Below, one piece after another: positions 2,608 through 64,000 of a DNA stretch of 64,000 bases; position 1 is the stretch's first letter; each line of letters opens with the position of its first letter. Below the pieces are notes generated by a model. The model saw only the letters and a program-made list of their open reading frames with translations, searched no databases and was not told the origin of the DNA. The position numbers and the translations under genes are program-made. The stretch covers positions 291,875 through 355,874 of IMG/VR virus record IMGVR_UViG_3300047476_002078; one strand, given 5' to 3'.

Positions 2608-3243
2608 ATGAAAAAAGCAAATCAGAGTCAATCAGATACAGATATTGAAAAACGTCGTTACGAAACAACGCTAGAAAGACCTCCAAGACATGATTTGAGA
2701 AGAGATCATGCTCCAGTACGTGACCCTGATTTACAAAAAGAAAAAATACAAAGAAGAGACGATATGGGTGGAACTTCTGTTTACAAGAAAAAGAACGAAC
2801 AAAAATCCAAAGCCTCCAAAGAAGAATCTGGTTCAACTGGAAGATTAATGGATGGCTGGGAACCTAAAAAAGAAAATTTAGAACAACTATTAAAAGTTGA
2901 AGCAAAACTAGATGTTTGTATTAAGTTTTTATCTCAAGCCCTCTCTGATTTTGCTGGTTTAAAATCCATAGACATTTCCCCTGACGGAAAATTAGGTGGA
3001 AGAGGTTTCGTGATGGATATTTCTGAAATCCGATCTCGTTTATATAGCACGGTAGAAAACATCTCTTTAGTGATTGATACTTTGTATGATGAAACTAGAG
3101 GAAAACATTGGACTAGCAAATTTGAAGTAGCTGAAATGAAAGAAGAGGCGAAAGAAGATGCAAAAGACGATCATTTGGAAGAATCTGACTTAAATAAAGT
3201 ATCTTCAATTTACGAATTTGTAAAAAAGAAGGCTAATAAATGA
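2608..3243 (+). CDS. hypothetical protein (charged, head-region)
   Basis: 211-aa ORF tightly packed between neighbours; stop overlaps the next start; no recognisable family. Confidence 0.7.
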   Translation: MKKANQSQSDTDIEKRRYETTLERPPRHDLRRDHAPVRDPDLQKEKIQRRDDMGGTSVYKKKNEQKSKASKEESGSTGRLMDGWEPKKENLEQLLKVEAKLDVCIKFLSQALSDFAGLKSIDISPDGKLGGRGFVMDISEIRSRLYSTVENISLVIDTLYDETRGKHWTSKFEVAEMKEEAKEDAKDDHLEESDLNKVSSIYEFVKKKANK

Positions 3244-3761
3244 GCCAAAAGGCAGCATTAAAAATAGCCGCTCATTGGATGACTGTCGCACAACCTAATC
3301 TAAAGTGTGACGAGTTCTCATTACCTTACTATATTATATTTTCTCAACGCATTAATTCCTTATATAACAAGCTTCCATCAAAAGTGAAGAAAGTTATGTA
3401 TGGGTGCAATTTACATTTGTGCTCTCAAGAAACTTTGGAAGAGTGTGCTGATAGAGAAGGAATTCTTGGTTTATGCAGACCTAAAGAAAAGTGCATTTGG
3501 TATAACATTGAAAGATTTTTGGACGGTAAAGAAGTCAATTTTGAAAAAAATCGTTTTGACAGTCTTTTTTATCATGAAATTGGGCATTACTTGACCCATT
3601 TTATGACAGAAAGAGAAAAATCTTTCTATTATAAATTATTCAATATGGAGCCAAAAACTTCAGGAGAACCTGAAGCAGATGGGTTTTCAGCTTACATGAG
3701 AGGGGTAGCTCCTTATCATGTACAAGAATTTTGGTCTTGGTATATTTTAAACGAATTGTAA
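3240..3761 (+). CDS. putative zincin-type (HExxH) metallopeptidase-like protein
   Basis: FYHEIGHYL motif followed by EPEADGFSAY (candidate third ligand Glu); N-terminal ALKIAA leader. Confidence 0.5.
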   Translation: MSQKAALKIAAHWMTVAQPNLKCDEFSLPYYIIFSQRINSLYNKLPSKVKKVMYGCNLHLCSQETLEECADREGILGLCRPKEKCIWYNIERFLDGKEVNFEKNRFDSLFYHEIGHYLTHFMTEREKSFYYKLFNMEPKTSGEPEADGFSAYMRGVAPYHVQEFWSWYILNEL

Positions 3762-3797
3762 TTATTTAATGATTTTTTATGTTTAGAAGGTTTTATT

Positions 3798-4520
3798 ATG
3801 AAAAAAGATATTGCAGAAAAAATTTTTAAAAAAATGGCTTATGAAAGTGGTGCAGACTATTTTCATAAACATAAAATTTTAGACTCTGGTGACAAACGTG
3901 AAGAAAGAGAGCCTTACACAAACCCTTCTCACGTAAGCGATGATGATCTTTTAGTAATAGCAAAACACGCCTCTACTATATTGGATAAAGAGCTAATGAA
4001 TTATAATGTAGAGGTTGCCAAGCAATCTGCCGTAGAAGTGGCTATTAAAACATTAGCAGACGGTAAGTATGACGGTAAGATTAATTCGGTAAACTATTTT
4101 AAAATTTTAAATTTAATGAATCAGTCAAAAACTGGAGGAGTAAACATGAAACGTACTGCAAAGTATTATACTGACAGACTTGATAAGATTGCAAACGAAA
4201 TTCGCAATCTTGTAGCTGAAGGTAAACTGGAAGCAAAAGTAGGATTTAATCTTGAATATGCCCTAGACCAAGTGTCAGATGAGCTTGAAGTTCAAGCAAA
4301 ACAGGCAAAAGCCCTAGAGCACGACAAAGATGAAAAATACATGAAAGATTTCGGTCAAGACCCTGCAACTCATGAGCAAGATAAAGACGAAGACTATATG
4401 AAAGAATTTCATAACTTTGGTCAAAATGTAATGTCTGAAGCTCACGATAAAGGTGAGTTCGACCCAAATAAAAAAGCAAGCAGGCTTGACGCTAAAAAAC
4501 TTGCTGCAAGAAGAAAGTAA
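3798..4520 (+). CDS. hypothetical head-region protein with a probable nested in-frame start at 4146
   Basis: 240-aa ORF. Internal GGAGGAG (4134-4140), 5-nt spacer, then in-frame ATG at 4146. D/E/K-rich repeats (HDKDEKYMKDF / EQDKDEDYMKEF). Confidence 0.7.
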   Translation: MKKDIAEKIFKKMAYESGADYFHKHKILDSGDKREEREPYTNPSHVSDDDLLVIAKHASTILDKELMNYNVEVAKQSAVEVAIKTLADGKYDGKINSVNYFKILNLMNQSKTGGVNMKRTAKYYTDRLDKIANEIRNLVAEGKLEAKVGFNLEYALDQVSDELEVQAKQAKALEHDKDEKYMKDFGQDPATHEQDKDEDYMKEFHNFGQNVMSEAHDKGEFDPNKKASRLDAKKLAARRK

Positions 4521-4539
4521 TAATTTTAGGGAGAGTGCT

Positions 4540-5058
4540 GTGAGCAAATCTAAAAAATCTTCAGTAGCTCTTTTTCCTTTCCAGACTTCAGTTTTAGATT
4601 ATAAAATTGGAGATCATGTAAAGAAATTGACTCGAAACAACGAAAGTCAGATTGTTGGTATAGTGACTCACATTTTACCAAAATCTTGCAAAATTAGAGT
4701 TCAGTGGACTTACGGAAATGAATTAGAGTCGCCTGAAGAAATCTACAAAGTTTCGCCAACTCTTTATCCAACTAGCGTAGGATTTGATACTTCTTATGAC
4801 AGTTGGGAGAACAGAGACAGTGAAAAAAATTACGGCACTTCTCTCCCTAAAAGACCAAAAAAATATTTAGAGTCTTTAGCTGATAAGATAGCATCAAAAC
4901 ATGTCAACGCTACTTCAATTTTAGTTGAAAACATACTTAGTATGAAAAAAGCTAATCTGAACGAACTACAATGTTATTTAAAGATGAGTAGTAAGTATGC
5001 CAAGAGTGTTGGAGATAGCTTACTAAAAGAATTGGTTTTATCTGTTTATGAAGAATAA
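4540..5058 (+). CDS. hypothetical protein
   Basis: Start revised to GTG 4540 (GGGAGAG just upstream, after the previous stop); N-terminal part looks like a small SH3/KOW-like beta domain (YKIGDHVKK...GIVTHI...IRVQW). Confidence 0.65.
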   Translation: MSKSKKSSVALFPFQTSVLDYKIGDHVKKLTRNNESQIVGIVTHILPKSCKIRVQWTYGNELESPEEIYKVSPTLYPTSVGFDTSYDSWENRDSEKNYGTSLPKRPKKYLESLADKIASKHVNATSILVENILSMKKANLNELQCYLKMSSKYAKSVGDSLLKELVLSVYEE

Positions 5059-5818
5059 AATTGCTATTGATTTAAACAAAGTAACTAACTCTTTGGATGC
5101 TAGATTCAAGTGTGAATTATTAGAAGACAATCTTCTTTGTATCGAAAATAAATTTGGCTTACCAAAACATATTTATGTAAATGATAAGGGCGAGATTTGG
5201 ACAAGTAGTGCTGACGTACTGGTAGATTCAAAAAATGTTGGCGATGTTGTGAAAACAGTTCGTAACCTAGCTGCTTCTAAACAAGAATTGGTCTTCAAGG
5301 TAAGCGATTTATTCAAATTAGTCGTTCCTCCTGACTGTTCGCTACCTGAACCAGAACTATTAGAAGACGAAGTTTTTGAAGTCGGTAATGACCTTGCTTC
5401 TGACATTTTGAAAGAGCCTGAAATTTTAGCACTTAACCTACCTCAAGAAGATGAAAATGAAGTAGTAGTAATGGTTTTTGATTCTATTGCTGACGATAAA
5501 ATCCAATCTTTTGAGGAAATGGAAAGCTTCATAGCTCCAAAATTGGCTTCTTTTTTAAATGATACTTTTGAAAATATGAAATTTATTAATATTGGAAACG
5601 GTTTAGTTGAAATTGTTTTTGATTCTAAATTAGCTTCAAATGTATCAAAAGATCAATTTTGTGATTTTCTTAAAGTAGCTTTTCAAGATGTAGATTTTTT
5701 TAATTTTTACTCAAGTTGCGTAAAAGATTTTTCAAAAAAGATTTCTTCTGATTTACCTGATTATTTTAAAATAAGAAATGAAGTCATAAATGAAGTGCTG
5801 GAGCAAATAAATGGATAA
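5048..5818 (+). CDS. hypothetical protein
   Basis: 256-aa ORF overlapping both neighbours in the operon; no family recognised. Confidence 0.7.
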   Translation: MKNKIAIDLNKVTNSLDARFKCELLEDNLLCIENKFGLPKHIYVNDKGEIWTSSADVLVDSKNVGDVVKTVRNLAASKQELVFKVSDLFKLVVPPDCSLPEPELLEDEVFEVGNDLASDILKEPEILALNLPQEDENEVVVMVFDSIADDKIQSFEEMESFIAPKLASFLNDTFENMKFINIGNGLVEIVFDSKLASNVSKDQFCDFLKVAFQDVDFFNFYSSCVKDFSKKISSDLPDYFKIRNEVINEVLEQING

Positions 5819-6164
5819 GAAAAAAGCTCAAAAGATAGCTAATAATATCATGCAAAAGAAAGCTTACATGGTTCTTAAAGTACCTGTTGGCTACGCACTT
5901 CTCAAAAACTCTAAAGATGTTTTACAAAAAAAGATCGGAATTCAAGTTCAGGATGAGGATTTAGAAGAAATTTTTGCAAGATTTATAGATTTAGTTATTT
6001 TTGGTCTTATGAAAGATACAGAAAATGTAGGGACTTCTATGCCATCGGCAGATGCTTTTGTTCAAGTAGCAGAAGAAGTTTTACAAGATAATTATGACAG
6101 TGATGAAGATTTTGAAGATTCTGATTTTGACGATGATATTGAATCTGAAAACAATAGGTATTAA
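5811..6164 (+). CDS. hypothetical protein, basic N-terminus and acidic C-terminus
   Basis: Stop directly abuts the ATG of the protease gene (TAAATG); QKIANNI leader. Confidence 0.7.
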   Translation: MDKKKAQKIANNIMQKKAYMVLKVPVGYALLKNSKDVLQKKIGIQVQDEDLEEIFARFIDLVIFGLMKDTENVGTSMPSADAFVQVAEEVLQDNYDSDEDFEDSDFDDDIESENNRY

Positions 6165-7796
6165 ATGGCTTTTTTAAAATATGCAGATGCTATAGTAAGA
6201 AATCCTAATTTAGAGCCAAAAGCTTGGAACAATATGCGAGCCGCTGCAACGGCAGTCAGAGTTCCGGTTTCTTCCATACTTGAAGATTTTTCGCCAGACA
6301 AATATCTACTTACCCACGCTACAATTGTAGCTTCCGTAGATGTAGAAGATAATGATTATTATATAAAACCAGACTGCTCACAATACGTTAATCAAAATGG
6401 CGACTGTTGGGAAAGGCAGCTTTTGATGGCTTCTTATCCAACATTTATTGGAGCTTATAATTATTTAGAGCATGTTCAAATTCCAGCTTTGTCAAAAGGC
6501 AGAATTATTGACGCTGTTGCTAGAAGTGTTTCAAATAACAATTCAGTTTATATAGATATTCTTGTAGCTACTGAAAGAAAGCACAGAGAATTAGTTGCAT
6601 CAATTGAAGGTGGAAAAATTTCTACACTTTCTATGGGGTGCTCAATCAAATATTCAATATGTTCCGCCTGCGGTAACAAAGCAGCCGATGAAACTGAATT
6701 ATGTGACCATATAAGATATATGAAAAATTCTTATTTCGTTGATGAAAACGGAGTAAAGAGGATAATTGCAGAACTTTGCGGTCATCGTGAAGAAAAAGAT
6801 TCTAACGTGTTTATTGAAGCATCTTGGGTTGCTAATCCAGCCTTCAAGGGTGCTGTAATGAGAAATATTTTATTTCCAAAAGATTCTTTAGAAAGTGTAG
6901 AAGTAGCAAAGAAAATTGAAGCTTCTTACGTTCTTAAAAAAGTAGAAGAAAATAGTTTAGACGCTTATTTAAAAGCAGCTTCACTTCGTAAAGCAGTTGA
7001 AGACCCAATGGATTTCCCAAATAAAGACGAAGAAGATTTAGTTAAACCAGAGCAAGCTCAACCAGAGCAAGCTCAACCAGAACAAGCTCAACCAGAGCAA
7101 GCTCAACCAGAACAAGCTCAACCAGAGCAAGCTCAACCAGAGCAAGCTCAACCAGAGCAAGCTCAACCAGAGCAAGCTCAACCAGAGCAAGCTCAACCAG
7201 AACAAGCTCAACCAGAGCAAGCTCAACCAGAGCAAGCTCAACCAGAGCAAGCTCAACCAGAGCAAGCTCAACCAGAAGAAGATTCTTTTGATGGGGTTAT
7301 AAATAAAGTTAAAAAAGAAATTCGCCAGCAAGTTATTGACGAACTGCAAAAAGAGTTGTCTGACTCGGTAACAACAAAAACACCGGATTTCTCAGATTCA
7401 GACAAAATGAATCAAGGTTGGAATACTAACGATAATCTAGTGAAAGCTTTTATTGAGATATATCAACCCAAAACAGGATTTTCAAAAGCTAAATTAGCCT
7501 CAATTTTTAAAATGGTTGAAGCTTATGAAAATAAGAAAGATATTGTTAAATTGGCTCACAGTTCTCGTGACCTTATAGATTTTTTTGAATTTGTAGATAC
7601 TTTTCAATTAAATCCAAAAAGTCTCAAGAAAAGTCACTACAATATTCTTAGAAAAGCTTCTAGCGAAAATTTAAGTAGTTTTGATAGTTTTTTAAACTTT
7701 GTTGCAAGTAACGGTATTTCCGATAATGCAGTAATTAACAGTATTTTAGCAAGGGCTAAGTTTATTCGTGAAAAATTTAAGGACGATAATCGCTGA
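6165..7796 (+). CDS. prohead (capsid maturation) serine protease, HK97/assemblin-type, with Zn-knuckle and PEQAQ repeat tract
   Basis: Upstream of scaffold, decoration and capsid genes. Candidate catalytic His in YLEHVQIP and Ser in STLSMGC. Cys cluster CSACG...LCDH follows; EASWVANPAFKGA motif. Confidence 0.75.
   Translation: MAFLKYADAIVRNPNLEPKAWNNMRAAATAVRVPVSSILEDFSPDKYLLTHATIVASVDVEDNDYYIKPDCSQYVNQNGDCWERQLLMASYPTFIGAYNYLEHVQIPALSKGRIIDAVARSVSNNNSVYIDILVATERKHRELVASIEGGKISTLSMGCSIKYSICSACGNKAADETELCDHIRYMKNSYFVDENGVKRIIAELCGHREEKDSNVFIEASWVANPAFKGAVMRNILFPKDSLESVEVAKKIEASYVLKKVEENSLDAYLKAASLRKAVEDPMDFPNKDEEDLVKPEQAQPEQAQPEQAQPEQAQPEQAQPEQAQPEQAQPEQAQPEQAQPEQAQPEQAQPEQAQPEQAQPEQAQPEQAQPEEDSFDGVINKVKKEIRQQVIDELQKELSDSVTTKTPDFSDSDKMNQGWNTNDNLVKAFIEIYQPKTGFSKAKLASIFKMVEAYENKKDIVKLAHSSRDLIDFFEFVDTFQLNPKSLKKSHYNILRKASSENLSSFDSFLNFVASNGISDNAVINSILARAKFIREKFKDDNR
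7047..7271 (+). repeat. 15 tandem copies of a 15-bp unit (CCAGARCAAGCTCAA) encoding (PEQAQ)15
   Basis: Read directly: 225 bp, with only GAG/GAA variation between copies. Confidence 0.97.
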
Positions 7797-7998
7797 ATTA
7801 GAAGTCCGTTTAGAGCGGATAGCGTACAAACCTAGATTTAAAAGACAACGTAAATTACGTGGTCCTAGAAAAACTAAAAGCCGAAAGTATTATCGCAGAA
7901 ATAAGTCTGAGATAAAACGTAGAATGAAGCATTATAGGAAAAAGTTTAAGACTTTTTTGAAAAATAGAAGGAAGAAAATTCATCATAGAAGGCTATAA
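7768..7998 (+). CDS. small, extremely Arg/Lys-rich (protamine-like) protein
   Basis: After the leader MKNLRTIIAELEVRLERIA, roughly half the residues are K or R (KPRFKRQRKLRGPRKTKSRKYYRRNK...). Confidence 0.65.
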   Translation: MKNLRTIIAELEVRLERIAYKPRFKRQRKLRGPRKTKSRKYYRRNKSEIKRRMKHYRKKFKTFLKNRRKKIHHRRL

Positions 7999-8006
7999 GG
8001 AATATC

Positions 8007-8282
8007 TTGAAAAAGCTCAATAGTGATTACTTAAAAAGATTGGTTGGGAGTATAGAGGAAATAGCTGACGATTTTCTTGATTCTAATGATTTTTCTACAG
8101 GATTAAAACTTAGAAGAATTGCTTCAAATATTATGGGAAGTTTAGCGTCAACTGATCTTTTAGTAGAAAATTTAGACGTTGATGATGAAAGTAGAGAGCA
8201 CATTGCTACAATAATAAAAGAAGCTGTCGCTGCAAAAAGAGCTTCTAAGCAAACTAAGAAAAAAGTTAAGAATAAAGTATAA
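8007..8282 (+). CDS. hypothetical protein
   Basis: TTG start with AAGGA upstream; RRIASNI motif; basic tail. Confidence 0.65.
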   Translation: MKKLNSDYLKRLVGSIEEIADDFLDSNDFSTGLKLRRIASNIMGSLASTDLLVENLDVDDESREHIATIIKEAVAAKRASKQTKKKVKNKV

Positions 8283-8318: not shown

Positions 8319-9626
8319 ATGAGAAACAGACTTACAAGATTAAAGAAAGCAGACCCTTTCACACTAGGACGTGAAAAAGAGAATCCACCTGTTGAAAAAT
8401 ATACTAACGGGGACCCTGATTCATGGGCTGAGACTCCTTACGACAAAAAACATTGGGAAGACGATAAGCGTGAAGAAACTAACCACGCTGCCGAATCAGA
8501 CCACAATTTCGGTGCTTCTGTAAAAGCTTCTGTAAAAGTTGCTCGTGAACTTCGTGAAAAAGCACTTAAATGCGTTCACATTGCTTCTGCTCTTTTCCCT
8601 ACAGCTTCAGAAGAAACTCTTGAAGCTCAAGGATTTGACCTTATGGAACTTTCTGATCGTTCAATCGAAGCAACACTTAAACGTATTGCTGAAATGGAAG
8701 AAATGAAAGAAGACGAAGCTCAAGAAGAAGAACAAGAAGAAGTAATGAAAGAAGCTCGTTCTCTTCTCGCAAAAGTTCGTTCTTTAATTGCTGAAGCTGA
8801 AGAAGGAGAAAAAGAAGAAGCTCTTGAAGAAGATGAAGCTTGTGAAGACGAAGAAGAAATGAATCAAGCTGAAAAAGCTGCATCTGTTCTTGTTAAAAAA
8901 GCTTCGGCTCTTGTAGCTGCCGCTGAGTATGAAGAAGAAATTGGTGCTGAAGAAGAAGCTGAAGCTAAAAAAGAAGAAGCAAAGCAAATCCTTGCTAAGG
9001 CTAAAAAAATTCTTGCAGGAGAGCTTCCACCAGCACTTAAAGAAAATGCAGAAAAGATGAAAAAACTTCATGAAGAAGGTGCAGAAGTTGATAATTCTAA
9101 ACTTAATACTGAAGGTCTTGAAGAAGCAGAAATGAGTCTTGAGGAAAAGAAAGAAGCTGCCCTTCGCCACTTAGCCGCTGCTAAAAAGCTTATGGCTGAA
9201 GTTGGAGTTGAAGATAAAGAAGAAGCTCACGAAGAAGAAGCACAATCTGAAGCTATGGAAGAAGAAGTAGAATCTGAAGAAGAAGCTATGGAAGAAGAAG
9301 TAGAATCTGAAGAAGAAGCTATGGAAGACGAAGAAGAACTTTCTATGGAAGAAGTTGACATGATTCCGTCTGAAAAAGACGAAGCTCTTGAAGACCTTTT
9401 CATGTCTCCTGATATGAAAGATGCTAAAGAAGCTTATGAAGACGCTTTCGGTGGGGAAGCTCACGAAGAGAAAGAAGAAAAACAAGCTTCTAAAACAGCT
9501 TCAAAGGCTCCTAAAAAAGGTGCTAAAACTCTGAAAGGTGGATTAAAAATTAGCTCTGTAAATAGTGCTGAAGATTTATCTAACTTGTGGGACTGCCCAC
9601 CAGATGTTTCTCACCTATTTAAGTAA
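8319..9626 (+). CDS. putative capsid scaffolding protein (Glu/Ala-rich, helical)
   Basis: GGAGG RBS; extreme E/A/K content; codon bias of a highly expressed gene (GCT, GAA, CGT, CTT); lies between protease and capsid genes; short conserved-looking C-terminus LSNLWDCPPDVSHLFK. Confidence 0.65.
   Translation: MRNRLTRLKKADPFTLGREKENPPVEKYTNGDPDSWAETPYDKKHWEDDKREETNHAAESDHNFGASVKASVKVARELREKALKCVHIASALFPTASEETLEAQGFDLMELSDRSIEATLKRIAEMEEMKEDEAQEEEQEEVMKEARSLLAKVRSLIAEAEEGEKEEALEEDEACEDEEEMNQAEKAASVLVKKASALVAAAEYEEEIGAEEEAEAKKEEAKQILAKAKKILAGELPPALKENAEKMKKLHEEGAEVDNSKLNTEGLEEAEMSLEEKKEAALRHLAAAKKLMAEVGVEDKEEAHEEEAQSEAMEEEVESEEEAMEEEVESEEEAMEDEEELSMEEVDMIPSEKDEALEDLFMSPDMKDAKEAYEDAFGGEAHEEKEEKQASKTASKAPKKGAKTLKGGLKISSVNSAEDLSNLWDCPPDVSHLFK
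9249..9328 (+). repeat. 33-bp tandem repeat (about 2.4 copies) encoding EAMEEEVESEE
   Basis: GAAGCTATGGAAGAAGAAGTAGAATCTGAAGAA repeated directly. Confidence 0.85.
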
Positions 9627-10762: not shown

Positions 10763-11632
10763 ATGAAACCAGCAGATAACGCAACAAAACAAAAAGTAAT
10801 CAGCGAACTGATTAAAACCGCCGCAGGCAGAGCAAAATTAGCTGCCTCTATGGTTCAACCTCTTCGCTTCCGTCGTGATTACACTTCAATTGGACGTAAA
10901 ACATTCCTAGTTGAAGCTTTACCAGATGGAGCACTTCCAATCTACGATAAAGACCCAAAGGCTACTGCCTACATTATCGGTGAAGAAGGTGAAAACATTC
11001 TTGCTATCCAAAAGCCTAAGCGTGTTATTTTCCCTCTTTTCGAGATTGCTTCTAACCCAGAAATTCCTCTAACGCAGATCAAAGAGCGTCGCTTCGACCT
11101 AATCGAACGTGCTCAAGACCTTGCTAAAGCTGAAATTCAAGCTGAAGAAGATGGTCGTGTATTTGAAATCATGAACGCAATCGCAGGTGCGGCTACTGAC
11201 GATGGTATCACTAACCCTGATATTCCAGTTGTAGCTCCTCTAACTGCTTCTGTTATGGCTGACTCTTTTGCAGACGTTGAGCGTCACGATCTTCGTGTTG
11301 CTAAAATTTTCGCAAACGCTAAAGACTATACAGATATTCGTAAATGGGGTCGCGACGTTCTCGACATCGAAACTCAGCAAACATTACTTAAAACAGGTCT
11401 TCTTGCATACCTTTGGGGTGCTCAAATTCTTGTTTCTCGTCGTGTTCCAGTAAACTACGTTTATACTTGCTGTGAAGCAGAAATGTTTGGACGTATTCCT
11501 GTAAGAACTGAACTTACTGTTCTTTCTGCGGATGATCCGAAAGCAAGAACTATCGGTTTCTCAATCTTTGAAAATATCGGAATTGGTGCTCATAACCCTG
11601 CCGGTCTTTCAAGACTTGTTCTTACTCGATAA
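10763..11632 (+). CDS. major capsid protein (HK97 fold)
   Basis: GRAKLAASMVQPL...LPDGALPIYD...FEIASNPEI...EEDGRV pattern, which from memory resembles capsids of Bxz1/E3-like myoviruses. AAGGAG RBS, strong high-expression codon bias, followed by a strong terminator. Confidence 0.85.
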   Translation: MKPADNATKQKVISELIKTAAGRAKLAASMVQPLRFRRDYTSIGRKTFLVEALPDGALPIYDKDPKATAYIIGEEGENILAIQKPKRVIFPLFEIASNPEIPLTQIKERRFDLIERAQDLAKAEIQAEEDGRVFEIMNAIAGAATDDGITNPDIPVVAPLTASVMADSFADVERHDLRVAKIFANAKDYTDIRKWGRDVLDIETQQTLLKTGLLAYLWGAQILVSRRVPVNYVYTCCEAEMFGRIPVRTELTVLSADDPKARTIGFSIFENIGIGAHNPAGLSRLVLTR

Positions 11633-11655: not shown

Positions 11656-11690
11656 AAGGGCGACCAGAAATGGTCGCCCTTTTTATTTTG
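11656..11690 (+). terminator. intrinsic terminator after the major capsid gene
   Basis: Perfect 11-bp stem AAGGGCGACCA-GAAA-TGGTCGCCCTT followed by TTTATTTT. Confidence 0.9.
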
Positions 11691-13515
11691 TGATTTTAAA
11701 TTTCCAATTTCCAGAATTCCATATTGAATAAATTCCTTTAGACGATAGAATTTGATCTGCGGTTAAATTGCTATTAAATGATTCTGGAAAAAATGATTTA
11801 ATTTTATGTTTTTGAAATGCTTCTCTTGACCAACGTCTGCGAAAATTTGTGTAGAATAATCTCGGTCCTGTATCTTCTACTAACTCAAATCCGTTTTTAA
11901 AATACACTGTGTTTTCTGCTACTGGAGATAAGTCTCTATCGCAGTATGAAATTATTGTATGCCATTTAAGAGTCTTCATAGCGTGTTTTAAGAGCCTTGA
12001 AAAACCTCCTCTAACCGATGTTCCTAGTCGAGAAGAGAATCTACTGATCTCTAACCCTTCTGGATGATTACGAAAACTCATTGCACATTGTATTTCATCT
12101 TTTTCATCTACCAAAGCAAATTGAGCTATTGCTTGAGCCTTACCATAAACATGTGTTTCATCAAAAAACTTAGAACAATCTATTTCTTTTATTTTTAGTG
12201 ATCTAGCATTTTTCTTATCTAATATTCCTAGCTCTGACTTAATAACTGATTGTATTTTTAAAAGACTCCAATCTTCCCAAAGATGAATTAACCTTATCCC
12301 TTCTTTGGTTGCGGATTGTGTCTTATTTAAGTGATAATTTTTTTCAACGGGTTTACCCCATTGTAAAGAGTGGGTGCTGTGGTGATATAGGCTATCAATT
12401 TCAAAAGCTAATTTTTTACTTTCAATATAAATATCTATCTCAAACCATTTACCTGTTGATGTGTTTTTAATAACGTCTTTAGTATTACACTGAACATTGA
12501 ATCCGAGAGACTCTATATATGAAGCTAATGCTATTTCAAGTTGTCCTCTTTTATTACCTACAAGCGGAAAGCATTTTCGACACCGTGGGGTCAAATAAAG
12601 GTCATCATAAAATTCTAACCCACAATCTAAATGTTTTATTTTGTATTGTTTATATCCCTTAGTAAAACCGTCTTTGGTAAAGATTCCTTTGTATTCATCG
12701 AGTAGAGCATAATTAAAAAAATCAAGAGTTTTTAATACCTCTGCATATTTTTTATCAGTGATGGTAGCGACTCTTTTTTGTATAACTTCTTGATTTGAAA
12801 GAGGTGATTCACTTCCATACCGAACTTTATTAGTATTTTGAATTTTTGAACGAACTATATTTGAAGATGCTGCGTGAGCAGTTCCATATCTTTCAATATT
12901 TGTGTTTAATATTTTCTGTTTTACTTCAGGGTCTTGTTGAGCAAAATTAAAACCATAGCGACATAGGTTTGTCTCTTTTCTTTTTACAAGAGCCTCTTCA
13001 GATGTAGCAGAAACACTTTGAGAAATTTTAACTCTTGAATCTACGAATTGAGCGACATTATCGACACAGTATTTTTCTTTTACTGTTATCTGAGTAGCTT
13101 TTTTAATTTCATCTGATTGTTGAGCGTACTCAACTCCATACAATTTCTTTGTAGTAGATCGCATTTTTTCGATTGCTAACTTTCTATTTTCTGATTCTTT
13201 GCGTAGCTCTAGGTTAAAAAGATTAAATCTTTCTTTTATAGTATTAGGCTTGATACCAAGTTTAGAAGAAAGAGATTCAATACTTTCACCTGACTTATAA
13301 TCATTATGGATATTTTCCCAGTATTCTTTATCATTTTTTGGGACAAGAGGTTTAAAAGAATTTCGAGGAAAGTAGTGGCTTTCAGAACTAAATCCTAAAG
13401 AACGCATACGGGAGTTAAAGGTTGCTTTTTTGTAACCTAATACAATCATAGCTTCTTCTTTGGAAATCTTTCCATGTGCATAATTAAGTAAGATTTGTGT
13501 TTCTTCAGGAGACAT
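11683..13515 (-). CDS. Hef-like putative homing endonuclease (HTH, YG-x-x-N/Y-x-x-Q repeats, Zn finger, Vsr/PD-(D/E)xK-like nuclease, GNAT-like C-terminus)
   Basis: ATG 13515 with AGGAGG RBS. Repeats YGVEYAQQ, YCVDNVAQ, YGFNFAQQ, YGTAHAAS, YGSESPLS; HLDCG...CRKC; EIDIYIESKKLAFEIDSLYHHS; EISRFSS...GGFSRLLK...IISYCDRD. Confidence 0.7.
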   Translation of the reverse strand: MSPEETQILLNYAHGKISKEEAMIVLGYKKATFNSRMRSLGFSSESHYFPRNSFKPLVPKNDKEYWENIHNDYKSGESIESLSSKLGIKPNTIKERFNLFNLELRKESENRKLAIEKMRSTTKKLYGVEYAQQSDEIKKATQITVKEKYCVDNVAQFVDSRVKISQSVSATSEEALVKRKETNLCRYGFNFAQQDPEVKQKILNTNIERYGTAHAASSNIVRSKIQNTNKVRYGSESPLSNQEVIQKRVATITDKKYAEVLKTLDFFNYALLDEYKGIFTKDGFTKGYKQYKIKHLDCGLEFYDDLYLTPRCRKCFPLVGNKRGQLEIALASYIESLGFNVQCNTKDVIKNTSTGKWFEIDIYIESKKLAFEIDSLYHHSTHSLQWGKPVEKNYHLNKTQSATKEGIRLIHLWEDWSLLKIQSVIKSELGILDKKNARSLKIKEIDCSKFFDETHVYGKAQAIAQFALVDEKDEIQCAMSFRNHPEGLEISRFSSRLGTSVRGGFSRLLKHAMKTLKWHTIISYCDRDLSPVAENTVYFKNGFELVEDTGPRLFYTNFRRRWSREAFQKHKIKSFFPESFNSNLTADQILSSKGIYSIWNSGNWKFKITK

Positions 13516-13996
13516 CAAGTCCTCCTTTAAGCTTTAGTAGAACCTCTTCAACAGTTAAATTTGGGTAATATTTTTCTTGAACGTATTTAAGCTTTTTAAT
13601 ATTTATATTTGTGGGCTTATTCTTATAGTATGAATCATTTCTAAGTTGAGAAGACATACAACCACAGCTTTTAGTTGTTCCTTTAATAAGATACTGGCTC
13701 CTTACATCAACTACATTTCCGCAAAAACATAAGCACGTCCAATAACCTCTACGAGATATTTTTTGTGTAGTTAAAAAACCAAATTTTTGATTCTCTTGAA
13801 TTTTTCTTCGACCAGATAAAACTTTTTTTCTTAAACATCCGCAAGATTTTGTATTTTTTAACAAATATGTATTTTTTTCACAGATAGTTCCACAGTCACA
13901 CATAACAAGCCAGTTACGGTTTTTCTTATCGTTTTCTAATTGGTCTATCACGACCATTGATCCAAACCTTTCTCCGATTAAACTTTTTCTTTTCAT
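13505..13996 (-). CDS. Cys-repeat protein of the type found N-terminal in phage HNH/AP2 endonucleases, lacking a nuclease domain
   Basis: Two copies of G-x-(R/K)-FG...W.(C/V).C(D/F)CG...K-SCGC. Confidence 0.65.
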   Translation of the reverse strand: MKRKSLIGERFGSMVVIDQLENDKKNRNWLVMCDCGTICEKNTYLLKNTKSCGCLRKKVLSGRRKIQENQKFGFLTTQKISRRGYWTCLCFCGNVVDVRSQYLIKGTTKSCGCMSSQLRNDSYYKNKPTNINIKKLKYVQEKYYPNLTVEEVLLKLKGGLDVS

Positions 13997-14817
13997 GATC
14001 TTTTAGGATAAGGTAAAGGTGTATAATTTTTAAGGCTGTTTAATTTTAAAGACTCTTTTTTATTAGAGCCTAAAACAAGAATGTATTTTCCTTTAGGTGA
14101 GATTTGTATTTTTTCAGATTCTTTTACGATAGAATTAATCCAATTTTTCCATGCTTTATTTACATCTTGTGGTATTTTAGAAAGGTCTTTAAAACCGTTT
14201 TCTTTTATCCAACTCGGTTCTATTTTGACATTATTCTCTTTCGCCCATTTTTTTAAAGTGGATGTTCGATAAAGAGACTGCTTTGAAAAAGGAGCACCTT
14301 TTTTAAATTTAGGATGAGTCAACATGTTTTTTGTTCCAAAATTACATCCTAGATAATCAAAATTGCAAGCTTGGTATATTGTTCCTATTTCATTGGCGGA
14401 AGAATCAGCATAAGCTACGAAAGCTCTTTTAGGTGTGGTTTTAACCATTTCTTTACATGAGAACATGATTAACCTGCTTCCGAGATTTTTTGGAGTCCAT
14501 GAAGCACAAGCACCCCGCTGAATTAAGGCTTCATATTTTTTGGTATCTTTCCCCAAAACATTTGAATATGAGCTAGGTTCATTTATTAAAACCACTCCGC
14601 CGAGTAAATTGTTATACCTTGCTGTAAAAACCCATTTAGGTTTTGTTCCTATATTTCCTAACCATTCATAAGTTTTTATAAAATCTATAATTTCTGAATT
14701 TAATATTTCTTGCTTCAAAGAAAAGTCCGAAGCTTTTAAATTACTAGAGTCAAAATTTAGATTAACTAAATCAGCTTCTAACCTTTGCTCTCGGATAATT
14801 CTTTGATGGCATTTCAT
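13993..14817 (-). CDS. Mom-like (GNAT-fold) putative DNA adenine modification protein
   Basis: FIKTYEWLG, LIQRGACASWTPKNLGSRLIMFS, VAYADSSANEIGTIYQACNFDYLG match the pattern of Mu Mom-family proteins. Confidence 0.65.
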   Translation of the reverse strand: MKCHQRIIREQRLEADLVNLNFDSSNLKASDFSLKQEILNSEIIDFIKTYEWLGNIGTKPKWVFTARYNNLLGGVVLINEPSSYSNVLGKDTKKYEALIQRGACASWTPKNLGSRLIMFSCKEMVKTTPKRAFVAYADSSANEIGTIYQACNFDYLGCNFGTKNMLTHPKFKKGAPFSKQSLYRTSTLKKWAKENNVKIEPSWIKENGFKDLSKIPQDVNKAWKNWINSIVKESEKIQISPKGKYILVLGSNKKESLKLNSLKNYTPLPYPKRS

Positions 14818-15716
14818 AGTAATTTATATTTTAATGTTGGTATTATGTTTGGTTCAAGTATTTTACTAAGAATTAAGGCATTTATTCCTTGAAAATATAT
14901 TCTTTTATTTCGAGTATAAGATTCAATTTTCCACCGACTTTTGAACCACTTTATACAATTGTTTATATCTTCTTCAGAAAAACAATCTGTGCTTATTCCC
15001 AATAAATTTTCATTCTTGAAACCATCATCTTGAAACCAAAAAGCTAAACCTCTGTCATCAAGACTATTAAGAACTTCTTCTGATACTATTTTTAATTTGT
15101 TTTTATAAAAAAGGCTGTGAATGTCATTGAATATAGGATTTGTTTCTGTTCTAAAAGAAACACTTTGGTAGTTTTTGTTAGTTCTTTTGTCAAATCTTTC
15201 AAAAATTTTAGGAGGTTGTTGGACAAAGTTTTTAAGAATATTATATTTTAATTCCACATAGTCTTTTTGTTTTAAACCATGCTCTATTTTTAATCTACCT
15301 TTGTTTCTATGCAATTCAATACTAGCATCACCCAACAAAGACCCTTTTATAAGCTGTTCCTGAATAGGGCTAATCCAATTAAGTAGTTCATTTTTTGAGT
15401 CTGAGATAACATCGCTTACTATTCGGAATCTAACTAAAGCTTTTTTTATAGCGTCAACATTGGTGTTTTTATTTGAAGCTATCTCTTCAATAGATTTATT
15501 GTTTTCTAAAAATTCTTTTATCAGATAATGTTTTTGGAGAGACACTCCGTCTTGCCTTCTCAGAGTTATTTTTTCTTTTTTAAATATTTGATACAAAGTT
15601 GAAGTCGAAAGACCTACCTTGGAGGCTATTTCAGATACGGGAACGCCTTCAGAATACATTTTGATTATGGTTTCAAACATATTGAATTTACTAACATTAC
15701 TATATTTTTGTGTCAA
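14814..15716 (-). CDS. LAGLIDADG homing endonuclease with N-terminal HTH repeats
   Basis: IKGSLLGDASI (motif 1), GLAFWFQDDG (motif 2), IEHGLKQKDY. Confidence 0.85.
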   Translation of the reverse strand: MTQKYSNVSKFNMFETIIKMYSEGVPVSEIASKVGLSTSTLYQIFKKEKITLRRQDGVSLQKHYLIKEFLENNKSIEEIASNKNTNVDAIKKALVRFRIVSDVISDSKNELLNWISPIQEQLIKGSLLGDASIELHRNKGRLKIEHGLKQKDYVELKYNILKNFVQQPPKIFERFDKRTNKNYQSVSFRTETNPIFNDIHSLFYKNKLKIVSEEVLNSLDDRGLAFWFQDDGFKNENLLGISTDCFSEEDINNCIKWFKSRWKIESYTRNKRIYFQGINALILSKILEPNIIPTLKYKLL

Positions 15717-50437: not shown

Positions 50438-51031
50438 ATGCAAAATTTAAAAGAACAAATCATTCACCTTCAACACAAGTTAGCCAGCATATCTCGTGGG
50501 GAGAGTGTTGAAGTAGGCTCAATAAGAATTCACCGTTATGATAGAGACGTTGCTGTTTGGGATTTAACAAACGCAGGCAAACGTGGAAAGATGGTAGATA
50601 GCTTCGTGCTTTATGATCTAAACAGATCAAATAATGAATTAGATTTGATGGAAGAATTAGAAAAAGCTAACTCTTTTGAGTCTGCGTTAAAAATTGCAAA
50701 AAAATACTTAGAGAAAGATGACAACATTAAGCTTTATGAAAGAAAGCATAAAGGTATTGAAATTTCACCGGCAGGTTTCAAACCAATCTCTATTCAAGGT
50801 AAAGATGTTTTTATTCAAGCTGATTACGACTCTTTCAGAGTGAGAGATCGTTCTGATATAAATGAAGAAACTTGTATTCCTGCCATTAAGGGTGGAAAAG
50901 CTGACATTAAAGTTTTTTATCGCTGGGTTAAAGACAATCAAGCAAAAATAAAAAATATGAACTTTAATGAAATTGTATCTGCAATGAGAGACGAAGGGAT
51001 TAAATATCACCGTTATTGTGCATTGGATTAA
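50438..51031 (+). CDS. hypothetical protein with N-terminal helical leader
   Basis: MQNLKEQIIHLQHKLAS leader; 197 aa. Confidence 0.7.
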   Translation: MQNLKEQIIHLQHKLASISRGESVEVGSIRIHRYDRDVAVWDLTNAGKRGKMVDSFVLYDLNRSNNELDLMEELEKANSFESALKIAKKYLEKDDNIKLYERKHKGIEISPAGFKPISIQGKDVFIQADYDSFRVRDRSDINEETCIPAIKGGKADIKVFYRWVKDNQAKIKNMNFNEIVSAMRDEGIKYHRYCALD

Positions 51032-51034
51032 ATT

Positions 51035-51421
51035 ATGAAAAAGATCAAAGAAAAAATAGCAGAGTTAGAGAAAAAATTAGCCATTTCTTATGAAGAATAT
51101 AAGAAAGAGCACCCTAAGACAAAGAAGACAAAAAGCGACCCTATGTTCCAAGGTCATAATAAAAAAATGACTCTTAACGATGATTCAAATGTTTATAGTC
51201 TAAAAAAGTGGTTTTCTAAGGGCTTCAATGAAGGCTTTGGAGATGGTAAATTTCACTTCATGGGCGAGCCTAAAAAGAATCCTTCAGATGGTTCTTTAGA
51301 AGTTGCTATTGATTTGGGTGGCTCCAGTAAGATTAAAGCTTTAAATTCTTTAAAAAAAGAAGTCGGAAATAATTACGAAGTTTCCTATGACAACCAAAAA
51401 ATTAAAATTACCAAAAAGTGA
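51035..51421 (+). CDS. hypothetical protein with N-terminal helical leader
   Basis: MKKIKEKIAELEKKLAIS leader; basic segment YKKEHPKTKKTKSDPMF. Confidence 0.7.
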   Translation: MKKIKEKIAELEKKLAISYEEYKKEHPKTKKTKSDPMFQGHNKKMTLNDDSNVYSLKKWFSKGFNEGFGDGKFHFMGEPKKNPSDGSLEVAIDLGGSSKIKALNSLKKEVGNNYEVSYDNQKIKITKK

Positions 51422-51582
51422 TTATTTGGATTCTTTACTTCGTTATTGAGAATAATAATACCATAGATTACCCATATCATTTTGCTTTCAGAGAAACTTG
51501 CGAAAAATTCGGCAAAGATAATAAAAAAATTTTTAAAGCTGCAAAATATAGATGTGTTAAAGAGATCATTGAATCTCAGTAA
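51418..51582 (+). CDS. possible small protein (54 aa) with hydrophobic N-terminus, not in the ORF track
   Basis: GTG overlapping the previous TGA; VIIWILYFVIE...ETCEKF...YRCVKEIIESQ; fills an otherwise unexplained gap. Confidence 0.4.
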   Translation: MIIWILYFVIENNNTIDYPYHFAFRETCEKFGKDNKKIFKAAKYRCVKEIIESQ

Positions 51583-53902: not shown

Positions 53903-53903
53903 T

Positions 53904-55556: not shown

Positions 55557-64000
<8,444 letters not shown>

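What the first reader, a model, noticed from the sequence alone, without database searches (positions are those of the whole stretch)
2608..8282. Recurring K-(I/L)-A-(N/S)-x-I and K/R-x-A leaders: a candidate capsid-targeting / maturation-cleavage code
Otherwise unrelated small proteins share a short basic-amphipathic motif: LKIAAHW (3240), DKIANEI (3798), DKIASKH (4540), NKIAIDL (5048), QKIANNI (5811), ERIAYK (7768), RRIASNI (8007), EKIARSI and IKVAWT (19381), KKLANNI (21174), EKLASEI and DKVAAA (21409), HKLASI (50438), KKLAIS (51035). The scaffold has KKAD, VKVAR, KTASK. Three genes also share a leader M-x-x-(L/I)-(K/R)-x-x-I-x-x-L-x-x-(K/R)-L (7768, 50438, 51035). T4 internal proteins carry a conserved N-terminal capsid-targeting sequence removed by gp21, and phiKZ-type proteases process many head proteins at one motif. 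By inference this phage uses an Ala-P1 equivalent to load a set of cargo proteins scattered across the genome, which would identify the ejected proteome from sequence alone.
Basis: partly seen in the sequence, partly recalled or inferred. Interest (0 to 1): 0.72.

Follow-up and report, generated by a model that had tools for sequence, protein, structure and literature searches.

The report
Likely head-protease cleavage motif K-x-A-S
It is best read as a local form of a Lys/Arg-x-Ala-Ser signal that recurs in the head-assembly proteins of phage-G-like giant phages, most likely where the head protease cuts them, much as herpesvirus proteases cut at Ala-Ser, but no cut has been shown yet.

Summary
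The window is the head/tail module of a 356-kb jumbo phage related to Bacillus phage G. The listed strings exist and exceed chance: K[IL]A[NS] occurs 12 times against 1.7 expected. In 19 non-redundant relatives (27-68% GC), an unbiased scan of head-module ORFs recovers K-x-A-S, 70 observed against 17 expected. The 23 other arrangements of K, A and S give 8-35. Flanking positions carry no information.

Sites lie on both sides of the catalytic domain of the assemblin-fold protease, several times in the scaffold including just before its conserved C-terminal tail, at the portal N-terminus, and in clusters in internal proteins. In the Tunturi clade, protease and scaffold share the same tail after x-A-S. 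In Myrna and E3 the protease is fused to a long scaffold-like extension.

Best reading (0.6): [K/R]-x-A|S is the maturation protease's cleavage motif, with herpesvirus-like release and maturation sites. The capsid-targeting leader and the claim that it identifies the ejected proteome are weakly supported. Similar N-terminal leaders exist but partly reflect paralogy, and single motif hits are not predictive. There are no proteolysis data, and complex prediction gave no answer. The decisive test is mass spectrometry of phage G virions.

The parts
6165..7796 (+). Head maturation protease, 543 aa. Catalytic domain is about residues 40-245, followed by a linker with 15 PEQAQ repeats and a C-terminal helical domain.
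   Evidence: phrog_18299. AF2 model pLDDT 73.5. The best PDB matches are herpesvirus assemblins and T4 gp21, Z up to 10.2. H103, H140 and S156 are invariant in 14 homologues.
6972..6983 (+). K-A-A-S at protease residues 270-273, just after the catalytic domain; candidate release site.
   Evidence: Same position holds KAAS in L007. Relatives carry K-x-A-S after the domain: KIAS/KVAS/KTAS/KAAS in the Tunturi clade and KVAS plus KIAS in phage G gp19.
7491..7502 (+). K-L-A-S at protease residue 443, in the C-terminal domain.
   Evidence: Kept in the L007 orthologue.
7650..7661 (+). R-K-A-S at protease residue 496, followed by an N-L-S-S-F stretch that loosely resembles the scaffold tail.
   Evidence: Kept as RRAS in L007. 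The resemblance to the scaffold tail is by eye only.
8319..9626 (+). Acidic scaffold-like protein, 435 aa, with four K-x-A-S sites and a conserved C-terminal tail.
   Evidence: Sits between protease and decoration/MCP genes. Orthologues in 21 loci. Sites are listed.
8874..8906 (+). K-A-A-S (residue 186) and K-K-A-S (residue 193) inside the scaffold.
   Evidence: The first is kept as KKAS in L007.
9480..9503 (+). Tandem K-Q-A-S and K-T-A-S (residues 388-395) before the G-A-K-x-L-x-G element.
   Evidence: A [KR]-[KT]-A-S at this position recurs in L001, L007, L016, L031, L047 and L052.
9546..9557 (+). K-I-S-S (residue 410), at the position where relatives carry K-[VQKT]-A-S, just before the tail; candidate maturation site, with Ser in place of Ala here.
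   Evidence: Alignment by eye of scaffold C-termini from about 15 loci.
9573..9623 (+). Scaffold C-terminal tail (D-L-S-N-L-W ... P-D-V-S-x-x-F); presumed capsid-protein-binding tail.
   Evidence: The most conserved part of the scaffold across loci. It is the only ORF in the own genome with this tail. The binding role is inferred.
3963..3974 (+). K-H-A-S, residue 56 of ORF 3798-4520.
   Evidence: Not kept in L007.
4185..4196 (+). K-I-A-N, residue 130 of ORF 3798-4520. In relatives this lies near the N-terminus of a separate small protein.
   Evidence: Residues 117-240 match separate 106-135-aa proteins in L007, L010, L016 and L018. L-D-K-I-A is kept; position 4 varies among N, E, G and Q.
4470..4481 (+). 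K-K-A-S, residue 225 of ORF 3798-4520, 15 residues from the C-terminus.
   Evidence: KSAS in L007 and KKAS in L010 at the same place.
4885..4896 (+). K-I-A-S in ORF 4453/4540-5058.
   Evidence: The orthologous column reads KIAL, RVAY, RVAS, RLAS and KEAS in distant relatives.
5540..5638 (+). Two K-L-A-S sites (residues 165 and 194) in ORF 5048-5818.
   Evidence: The second is kept in L007.
5832..5843 (+). K-I-A-N at residue 8 of ORF 5811-6164.
   Evidence: RIAN in L007.
7768..7998 (+). 76-aa very basic protein. An amphipathic leader ends in R-I-A (nt 7816-7824) and is followed by Y-K-P-R and a Lys/Arg-rich body.
   Evidence: The leader/body junction is kept in L007 (K-V-A-Y-K-P-R, unannotated) and partly in L023.
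8115..8126 (+). R-I-A-S, residue 37 of ORF 8007-8282.
   Evidence: Identical R-R-I-A-S-N-I in the unannotated L007 orthologue.
8235..8246 (+). K-R-A-S, residue 77 of ORF 8007-8282, 15 residues from the C-terminus.
   Evidence: Not kept in L007.
10763..11632 (+). Major capsid protein, HK97 type, no delta domain.
   Evidence: 38% identical to phage G gp27, PDB 6WKK, E 4e-64.
50438..51421 (+). ORFs 50438 and 51035, with N-terminal leaders M-x-x-[LI]-K-x-x-I-x-x-L-x-x-K-L-A.
   Evidence: 51035 shares about 40-90 N-terminal residues with genome ORFs 120680 and 89276.

Best explanation
[K/R]-x-A-S is the recognition motif of the phage's assemblin-fold head maturation protease (6165-7796), cut between Ala (P1) and Ser (P1'), with Lys/Arg at P3.

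Proposed sequence of events:
1. Protease, scaffold, portal and several small internal proteins co-assemble inside the procapsid.
2. The scaffold is held by its conserved C-terminal tail. In the Tunturi clade the protease is held by the same tail.
3. The activated protease frees its own catalytic domain at sites on either side of it (K-A-A-S at residue 270 here).
4. It chops the scaffold at internal sites and severs it from the tail at the last site, so that the scaffold can leave.
5. It trims the portal N-terminus and processes the internal proteins.

Shown: enrichment of the motif, its specificity, its conservation in position, its placement, and the protease fold. Inferred: that it is cut, where the bond lies, and that the tail binds the capsid protein.
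For: Enrichment in 19 non-redundant relatives (27-68% GC), ORFs within 8.5 kb upstream of the capsid gene:
- K.AS is 70 observed against 17 expected, z about 13; downstream ORFs give 22 against 12.
- In an unbiased scan of all residue triples in five spacings, it is the top pattern not explained by single-copy protease-domain motifs or by poly-Glu low-complexity runs.
- The 23 other orders and spacings of K, A and S give 8-35. Shuffles within 10-30-residue blocks give 17 +/- 4.
- Specificity: position 1 K 4.2x, R 3.2x; position 3 clearly only A; position 4 S 4.2x; flanks carry no information. This P3-x-P1 shape matches A-X-E of SPN3US gp245 (PMC10052503) and the Ala-Ser or Ala-Thr sites of herpesvirus proteases (PMC4498786).
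- The enrichment holds separately in proteases (20 against 5.2), scaffolds (25 against 4.0) and other head-module proteins (25 against 7.3).

Placement:
- Sites flank the catalytic domain of the protease.
- Two sites bracket a conserved element just before the scaffold tail.
- A site lies at the portal N-terminus in 5 of 6 portals, including phage G gp14.
- Internal proteins carry several sites: five in Tunturi_5 gp328, annotated 'DNA ejection protein', and six in a 488-aa protein next to the terminase in the own genome, P 2.6e-5.
- 30 of 70 sites lie in the last fifth of their protein.

Conservation and fold:
- 10 of 14 aligned sites are kept between the window and L007, whose proteins are 55% identical overall.
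- Tunturi-clade protease and scaffold tails share x-A-S followed by D-L-G-[DE]-A-L-[MF]; hhalign P 2.4e-4.
- Myrna gp97 has the protease domain followed by a long extension up to the decoration and capsid genes, read here as a protease-scaffold fusion. It ends with KVAS and RTAS before a short tail.
- Protease fold: assemblins and T4 gp21, Z 7.4-10.2; unrelated folds score at most 6.2.
Against: - No proteolysis or N-terminal data exist for any member. The phage G proteomics paper gives no processing information and its supplements are not held.
- Complex prediction of the protease with a scaffold peptide gave no answer.
- In this window the last scaffold site is K-I-S-S and the protease N-terminal site is degenerate (V-S-S), so Ala is not strict here.
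- The phage G scaffold candidates gp20 and gp21 carry no K.AS.
- Some window sites, such as K-I-A-N-E-I-R, lie in stretches that look helical rather than linker-like. Flanks of sites are no more hydrophilic than the rest of the same proteins.
- Sites in orthologues are not independent observations.
- The conserved K-L-A-A-S in the capsid protein is probably not cut: phage G lacks it and its capsid protein is essentially full length in PDB 6WKK.
Confidence: 0.6

Rival explanations
1. K-x-A-S is a docking motif, not a cut site. It would be a short linear motif by which scaffold, protease, portal and cargo bind a common partner inside the procapsid (capsid protein interior or scaffold) without being cleaved there.
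For: The same enrichment and conservation data fit this reading. The motif sits next to conserved C-terminal tails. Several small head proteins have it 10-15 residues from the C-terminus, like cargo-loading peptides.
Against: Flanks carry no information and position 2 is free; this is typical of protease subsites and unusual for a binding helix or strand. Up to five or six copies occur in one protein. Its place at both borders of the protease catalytic domain and before the scaffold tail fits release better than binding. The conserved tails themselves are better binding candidates.
Confidence: 0.2
2. One reading: an N-terminal amphipathic leader ending in K-(I/L)-A-(S/N) is a T4-like capsid-targeting sequence. 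It would load a set of cargo proteins encoded all over the genome, so that the ejected proteome can be read from sequence.
For: Three strict leaders lie at N-termini only in 7768, 50438 and 51035. An unbiased comparison of all N-termini gives 21 pairs scoring 36 or more against 0 in shuffles. These include two clusters of about 12 small proteins, M-x-x-[IV]-x-x-L-x-K-[IV]-[AS]-x-x-L-E-K and M-x-[IL]-K-E-x-I-x-x-L-E-x-K-[IL]-[AS]-S. In 7768 the junction of leader and basic body is kept in L007. Ten of 32 [KR][IL]A[NS] hits lie within 25 residues of a start (counted by hand).
Against: Many leader-bearing proteins are tandem paralogues whose similarity runs 40-90 residues, so the shared N-terminus partly reflects common descent. 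In relatives' head modules only about 5 of 70 sites lie in the first 35 residues. Nothing shows that these proteins are in the virion. No diverged orthologue of 50438 was found to test conservation. The three-residue core occurs 60 times outside the head module, near chance.
Confidence: 0.12
3. Chance or composition: the motif reflects Lys/Ala/Ser-rich helical or disordered sequence in an AT-rich genome.
For: Outside head modules the motif is still 1.3-1.9 times over the shuffle expectation. [KR].A alone is barely enriched.
Against: The permutation control, local shuffles, independence from GC content (27-68%), synonymous codon variation and conservation in position all argue against it.
Confidence: 0.03

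Closest known systems
Herpesvirus assemblin with its release (R) and maturational (M) sites (UL26/UL26.5)
   Same: Same protease fold. A candidate cut at Ala followed by Ser. One site lies just after the catalytic domain. Another lies shortly before the scaffold's C-terminal tail, which in herpesviruses binds the capsid protein and is cut off at the M site (PMC4498786). Protease and scaffold share the C-terminal tail in the Tunturi clade. In Myrna and E3 the protease domain is followed in one polypeptide by a long extension up to the decoration and capsid genes, which I read as a fused scaffold.
   Different: The presumed P3 residue is Lys/Arg rather than Val/Leu/Ile. In this window protease and scaffold are separate genes, not nested in frame, and the window's protease lacks the scaffold tail. 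There are many more sites per protein and further substrates (portal, internal proteins). Cleavage is not demonstrated.
T4 gp21 prohead protease and the capsid-targeting sequence of internal proteins
   Same: Same fold (5JBL, Z 9.9). Two-determinant P3-x-P1 motif (L/I-x-E in T4, from established knowledge). The T4 protease processes itself, the scaffold and internal proteins. N-terminal leaders ending in the motif exist in this genome.
   Different: P1 would be Ala, not Glu. The capsid protein is probably not cut. Family-wide the sites are skewed to C-termini. The leaders are not shown to target anything.
phiKZ gp175 / SPN3US gp245 processing of head and ejection proteins at A/S/G-X-E
   Same: One short motif is reused many times in many head proteins of a jumbo phage, including portal, protease and ejection proteins, with several motifs per propeptide (PMC10052503).
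   Different: A different motif (P1 Ala followed by Ser, against P1 Glu). A different capsid protein lineage (small HK97-type protein with a separate scaffold). That system is mapped by mass spectrometry; this one is only predicted.
HK97 protease C-terminal targeting tail and encapsulin cargo-loading peptides
   Same: A short C-terminal tail that would dock a protein to the inside of an HK97-fold shell. Here the tail is shared by scaffold and protease.
   Different: There is no sequence similarity. Here the tail is preceded by a candidate cut site. Binding is untested.

Membership tests
Assemblin-fold prohead proteases (herpesvirus assemblin, T4 gp21, HK97 gp4 lineage) | The assemblin/gp21 fold | tested here: met
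   The top 20 PDB entries are all herpesvirus proteases or T4 gp21, Z 10.2 down to 6.5; unrelated folds score 6.2 or less. Foldseek ranks KSHV protease first, E 9e-3.
Assemblin-fold prohead proteases (herpesvirus assemblin, T4 gp21, HK97 gp4 lineage) | Catalytic Ser and His conserved, in the order His ... Ser ... third residue | tested here: inconclusive
   H103 and S156 (in L-S-M-G-C) are invariant in 22 homologues. They, H140 and others are invariant in 14; D175 and H182 are nearly invariant. The His-Ser spacing of 53 is close to the 55 I recall for T4 gp21. Their position in the active site of the model was not inspected.
Assemblin-fold prohead proteases (herpesvirus assemblin, T4 gp21, HK97 gp4 lineage) | Gene lies beside the scaffold and major capsid genes | tested here: met
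   Order protease, scaffold, decoration, capsid protein in the window and in the relatives examined.
Herpesvirus-type R/M-site maturation logic | Cleavage between Ala and Ser | not testable with these tools
   Only the motif is seen. Complex prediction gave no answer.
Herpesvirus-type R/M-site maturation logic | A site immediately C-terminal to the catalytic domain | tested here: met
   The motif is present there in the window (KAAS at 270), L007, L013, L026, L042, the Tunturi clade and phage G gp19. Met for presence of the motif only.
Herpesvirus-type R/M-site maturation logic | A site a short distance before the scaffold's C-terminal capsid-binding tail | tested here: met
   K-[VQKT]-A-S lies 4-8 residues before the conserved tail in most loci; it is K-I-S-S in the window and in L007. 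Binding by the tail is inferred.
Herpesvirus-type R/M-site maturation logic | Protease precursor and scaffold share the same C-terminus | tested here: inconclusive
   Met in the Tunturi clade. In Myrna and E3 the protease domain is followed by a long extension read as a fused scaffold. Not met in the window, whose protease ends in a different domain.
T4-type capsid-targeting sequence | A short N-terminal leader shared by unrelated internal proteins and ending at a protease site | tested here: inconclusive
   Leader clusters are found, but they are partly explained by paralogy and are not seen in relatives' head modules.
T4-type capsid-targeting sequence | The leader is sufficient to load a foreign protein into the head | not testable with these tools
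   Needs a packaging assay.
phiKZ/SPN3US-type multi-substrate processing | One motif present many times in many head, portal and ejection proteins | tested here: met
   Met for presence of the motif only.

The most novel reading that the evidence does not exclude
Phage-G-like jumbo phages and their actinophage cousins keep the whole herpesvirus maturation logic. That logic is an assemblin-fold protease that cuts at Ala|Ser, one site that releases it from its attachment, and one site that severs a capsid-binding C-terminal tail shared by protease and scaffold. If so, the specificity and wiring, not just the folds, predate the split between tailed phages and herpesviruses. In addition, this lineage would use N-terminal leaders ending in the same site to load scattered small proteins, including a protamine-like basic peptide (7768).
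Probability: 0.25. Interest if true: 0.8.

Novelty: new variant of a known kind. Interest (0 to 1): 0.6.

Why it matters
Prohead-protease cleavage codes have been mapped for very few phage lineages (T4, phiKZ/SPN3US, HK97). None is known for the phage G / 'megaphage' lineage, which includes the largest cultivated phage and many uncultured 300-500-kb genomes.

A sequence-readable code would have three uses:
- It would allow annotation of scaffold, protease borders and internal or ejected proteins, which now carry no annotation at all; Pfam and PHROGs are blank for seven of the window's head ORFs.
- It would predict the mature forms of these proteins for cryo-EM model building.
- It would give a handle for loading foreign proteins into very large capsids.

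The Ala|Ser specificity and the tail shared by protease and scaffold would also be a new functional link between tailed phages and herpesviruses. Phage G can be grown, so the prediction can be tested directly.

Tried and rejected
- Pfam and PHROGs on the small head ORFs gave no hits.
- BLAST among the window's small proteins showed no paralogy except 21174/21409, so shared descent does not explain the head-module motif.
- Complex prediction of the protease domain with a scaffold peptide scored 0.01, no answer; I do not use it either way.
- Flank hydrophobicity and content of disorder-promoting residues around sites did not differ from the rest of the same proteins, so I cannot argue from accessibility.
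- I looked for experimental processing data. The phage G multi-omics paper has no cleavage, N-terminus or leader information and no held supplements. The Jug-phage and Tunturi papers gave nothing on this. Literature searches for an Ala-Ser or KXAS phage protease motif found nothing.
- A search for diverged orthologues of 50438 to test leader conservation found only near-identical copies.
- A DNA-level motif is rejected because the codons vary.
- Cleavage of the capsid protein at K-L-A-A-S is rejected.
- M-K-R-L-[IV]-K N-termini in phage G: 6 matches against 0 in the control. This is too few to build on.

Full report
WHAT THE WINDOW IS

The window (34% GC) is the last 64 kb of a single 355,874-bp contig. 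The ORF at 10763-11632 is an HK97-type major capsid protein. It is 75% identical to that of an uncultured 485-kb phage (LR745208.1), 52% to Tunturiibacter phage Tunturi_5, 38% to Bacillus phage G gp27 (PDB 6WKK), and about 27% to cluster C mycobacteriophages and to Gordonia and Rhodococcus phages.

Upstream lie, all on the + strand:
- small ORFs 2608, 3240, 3798, 4453/4540, 5048 and 5811, with no Pfam or PHROG match;
- a 543-aa protease (6165-7796; phrog_18299);
- two tiny ORFs (7768, 8007);
- an acidic scaffold-like protein (8319-9626);
- two decoration-like proteins.

An AF2 model of protease residues 1-275 (pLDDT 73.5) matches herpesvirus assemblins and T4 gp21 and nothing else comparably: Z is 10.2 to 6.5 for the top 20 entries, and unrelated folds score 6.2 or less. 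H103, H140 and S156 (in L-S-M-G-C) are invariant. Portal and terminase lie about 100 kb away in this genome. In relatives the portal sits 6-8 kb upstream of the protease.

Yes, in part. All the strings are there.
- Against within-protein shuffles, K[IL]A[NS] is 12 against 1.7 and [KR][IL]A[NS].I is 5 against 0.1. The loose [KR].A is only 133 against 115. These patterns were chosen after seeing the data.
- Independent checks hold. Thirteen of the genome's 32 [KR][IL]A[NS] hits are in the window.
- The small proteins are not paralogues, except 21174/21409.
- All six head-module instances (3798, 4453, 5048, 5811, 7768, 8007) are kept in the orthologues of relative L007, whose proteins are only 40-60% identical. 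Two of those orthologues are unannotated small ORFs.
- Codons at the sites differ synonymously.

WHAT THE MOTIF REALLY IS

I fetched 80 related loci by capsid-protein homology and reduced them, together with three GenBank records, to 19 non-redundant loci spanning 27-68% GC.
- In ORFs within 8.5 kb upstream of the capsid gene, K.AS occurs 70 times against 17 expected (z about 13). Downstream ORFs give 22 against 12.
- A scan of every residue triple in five spacings ranks K.AS highest among patterns not explained by single-copy conserved protease-domain motifs or by poly-Glu low-complexity runs.
- Positions on either side carry no information, and position 2 takes at least 16 different residues.
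- Single substitutions show K (4.2x) or R (3.2x) at position 1, clearly only A at position 3, and S (4.2x) at position 4. N at position 4 is no more enriched than in controls.
- The 23 other orders and spacings of K, A and S give 8-35 hits. Shuffling within 10-30-residue blocks gives 17 +/- 4. Local Lys/Ala/Ser-rich composition is therefore not the cause.
- The enrichment holds separately in proteases (20 against 5.2), scaffolds (25 against 4.0) and the remaining head-module proteins (25 against 7.3).
- In the window's own head module, [KR].AS is 14 against 2.0. Against the rest of the genome the odds ratio is 10.9, p 5e-10.

WHERE THE SITES SIT

1. Protease. A site follows the catalytic domain directly. 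It is K-A-A-S at residue 270 here and in L007; KIAS, KVAS, KTAS or KAAS in the Tunturi clade; KVAS and KIAS in phage G gp19. Many relatives also have x-A-S about ten residues before the first strand of the domain, in a stretch that the model leaves disordered.
2. Scaffold. The C-terminal region has a conserved plan: [KR]-[KT]-A-S, then G-A-K-x-L-x-G, then K-[VQKT]-A-S, then 4-8 residues, then the most conserved part of the protein, D-L-S-x-L-W ... P-D-V-S-x-x-F. The window has K-Q-A-S and K-T-A-S in tandem, and K-I-S-S at the last position.
3. Portal. A [KR]-x-A-[SN] lies at the end of the variable N-terminal leader in 5 of 6 portals, including phage G gp14.
4. Internal proteins. Tunturi_5 gp328, annotated 'DNA ejection protein', has five sites. 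A 488-aa protein beside the terminase in the own genome has six (P 2.6e-5).
5. Position within the protein. Thirty of 70 sites lie in the last fifth of their protein, several of them 10-15 residues from the end of small head proteins.

A SHARED TAIL, AND PROTEASES WITH A LONG EXTENSION

In nine Tunturi-clade loci the protease and the scaffold both end with x-A-S, a short spacer, and [DN]-[LI]-G-[DE]-A-L-[MFL]. A regular expression for this tail hits only protease, scaffold and one extra small protein among all ORFs of those loci. Profile comparison of the two tails gives P 2.4e-4 over 11 columns.

In Myrna gp97 (annotated as tape measure) and Rhodococcus phage E3 gp77, the homologous protease domain (E 9e-18 and 5e-22) is followed by a 650-950-residue extension that runs up to the decoration and capsid genes. 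I read this as a protease fused to the scaffold. Myrna's extension ends with KVAS and RTAS before a short tail.

MOST LIKELY MECHANISM

The motif has the P3-x-P1 shape known for this protease fold: A-X-E for SPN3US gp245 (PMC10052503), L/I-x-E for T4 gp21 (established knowledge), and Ala-Ser or Ala-Thr at the herpesvirus release and maturational sites (PMC4498786). Its placement mirrors the herpesvirus scheme. One site frees the catalytic domain. Another severs the scaffold from the C-terminal tail that, in herpesviruses, holds the capsid protein.

I therefore propose that [K/R]-x-A|S is the cleavage motif of the 6165 protease, with these substrates:
- the protease itself;
- the scaffold, both fragmented and released from its tail;
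- the portal N-terminus;
- several internal proteins.

Shown: enrichment, specificity, conservation, placement and fold. Inferred: that cleavage happens, that the scissile bond is Ala|Ser, and that the tail binds the capsid protein. Confidence is 0.6.

Points against:
- There are no experimental data on processing.
- The window itself has Ser instead of Ala at two expected sites.
- Phage G gp20 and gp21 lack the motif.
- Some sites look helical.
- Complex prediction gave no answer.

The conserved K-L-A-A-S in the capsid protein is probably structural, because phage G lacks it and its capsid protein is essentially full length in 6WKK.

THE N-TERMINAL LEADER

The three-gene leader is real as strings and is found only at those three N-termini. 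An unbiased all-against-all comparison of N-termini gives 21 pairs above a score that no shuffled pair reaches. Besides obvious enzyme paralogues, it reveals two clusters of about a dozen small proteins whose first 14-17 residues form an amphipathic helix ending in K-[IVL]-[AS]-[SN]. That is what a T4-like targeting sequence followed by a cut site would look like.

However:
- many of these genes are tandem paralogues whose similarity extends 40-90 residues;
- nothing places them in the virion;
- relatives' head modules show no N-terminal skew of sites;
- no diverged orthologue of 50438 was available.

I rate this reading at about 0.12. Because the three-residue core occurs 60 times outside the head module, near chance, single hits cannot define an ejected proteome. 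Only proteins with several sites, or sites conserved in position, are informative.

COMPARISON AND NOVELTY

The thing works like the herpesvirus R/M-site system and like T4 and phiKZ multi-substrate processing. It differs from all of them in specificity (Lys/Arg at P3 with Ala|Ser) and from herpesviruses in gene organisation. I found no description of it. It is a new variant of a known kind, and it is directly testable in phage G.

Noticed in passing
window 55557-64000 (+), running off the contig end: One open frame of at least 2,814 aa is made almost entirely of collagen-like G-x-y triplets (18-nt period, about 250 copies in the largest array). It has 50-53% GC in a 33% GC genome. The minus-strand ORFs listed there are shadows of it. 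The contig, and probably the assembly, ends inside the repeats. Large multi-domain glycosyltransferase genes lie just upstream on the minus strand (51566-53917, 53904-55382), and another lies at 23009-25249.
   Followed up: partly
window 7768-7998 (+): A 76-aa protein overlaps the 3' end of the protease gene. After a 19-residue amphipathic leader ending in R-I-A, the rest is about half Lys/Arg (Y-K-P-R-F-K-R-Q-R-K ...). The junction is kept in L007 and L023. It could be a protamine-like DNA-condensing head peptide released from its leader.
   Followed up: partly
window 7047-7271 (+), inside the protease gene: Fifteen tandem P-E-Q-A-Q repeats form the linker between the catalytic and C-terminal domains. 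The near-identical contig L006 has a 613-aa protease against 543 aa here, so the repeat number probably varies between strains.
   Followed up: no
L012, L018, L022, L042, L052 (protease genes): Protease genes of several relatives are 760-1,474 aa long. An intein-like insert appears to follow the catalytic L-S-M-G-C directly: the alignment breaks after the Cys and continues with F-L-P-G-T-Q-V.
   Followed up: no
window 11683-15716 (-): A minus-strand cassette is wedged between the capsid gene and the next structural genes. It holds a LAGLIDADG endonuclease with an HTH domain (14814-15716), a Mom-family protein (13993-14817), a 163-aa ORF, and a 611-aa DUF7487 protein. It is probably mobile or modification-related.
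   Followed up: partly
window 3798-4520 (+): This ORF looks like a fusion. Residues 117-240, starting at an internal Met, match separate 106-135-aa proteins in L007, L010, L016 and L018, and L007 has both forms. The family carries a twice-repeated, well-conserved D-x-D-E-x-Y-M motif of unknown role.
   Followed up: partly
own genome about 64-121 kb and 168-170 kb (outside the window): Tandem arrays of small paralogous genes have N-termini reading M-K-K-[IV]-...-L-E-K-K-[IL]-[AS]-S. One subgroup (genome ORFs 89276 and 120680, and window ORF 51035) also shares Y-x-E-Y-K-K-x-H-P-x-T-K-K-T-x-S-D-P-M-F.
   Followed up: partly
L085 7650-11285 (Mycobacterium phage Myrna gp97): It is annotated as tape measure, but its N-terminus is homologous to the head protease (E 9e-18) and it sits directly before the decoration and capsid genes. 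It is more likely a protease-scaffold fusion.
   Followed up: yes
own genome 190089-197050 (locus L084): Terminase and portal lie about 100 kb from the protease, scaffold and capsid module, whereas in relatives the portal is 6-8 kb upstream of the protease. A 488-aa protein of no known family with six [KR]-x-A-S sites sits just before the terminase.
   Followed up: partly
L003 (phage G) and record NC_023719.1: Several phage G proteins start with M-K-R-L-[IV]-K (6 exact DNA matches against 0 in the control). One of them continues K-K-A-S. This may be a leader dialect of that phage.
   Followed up: partly
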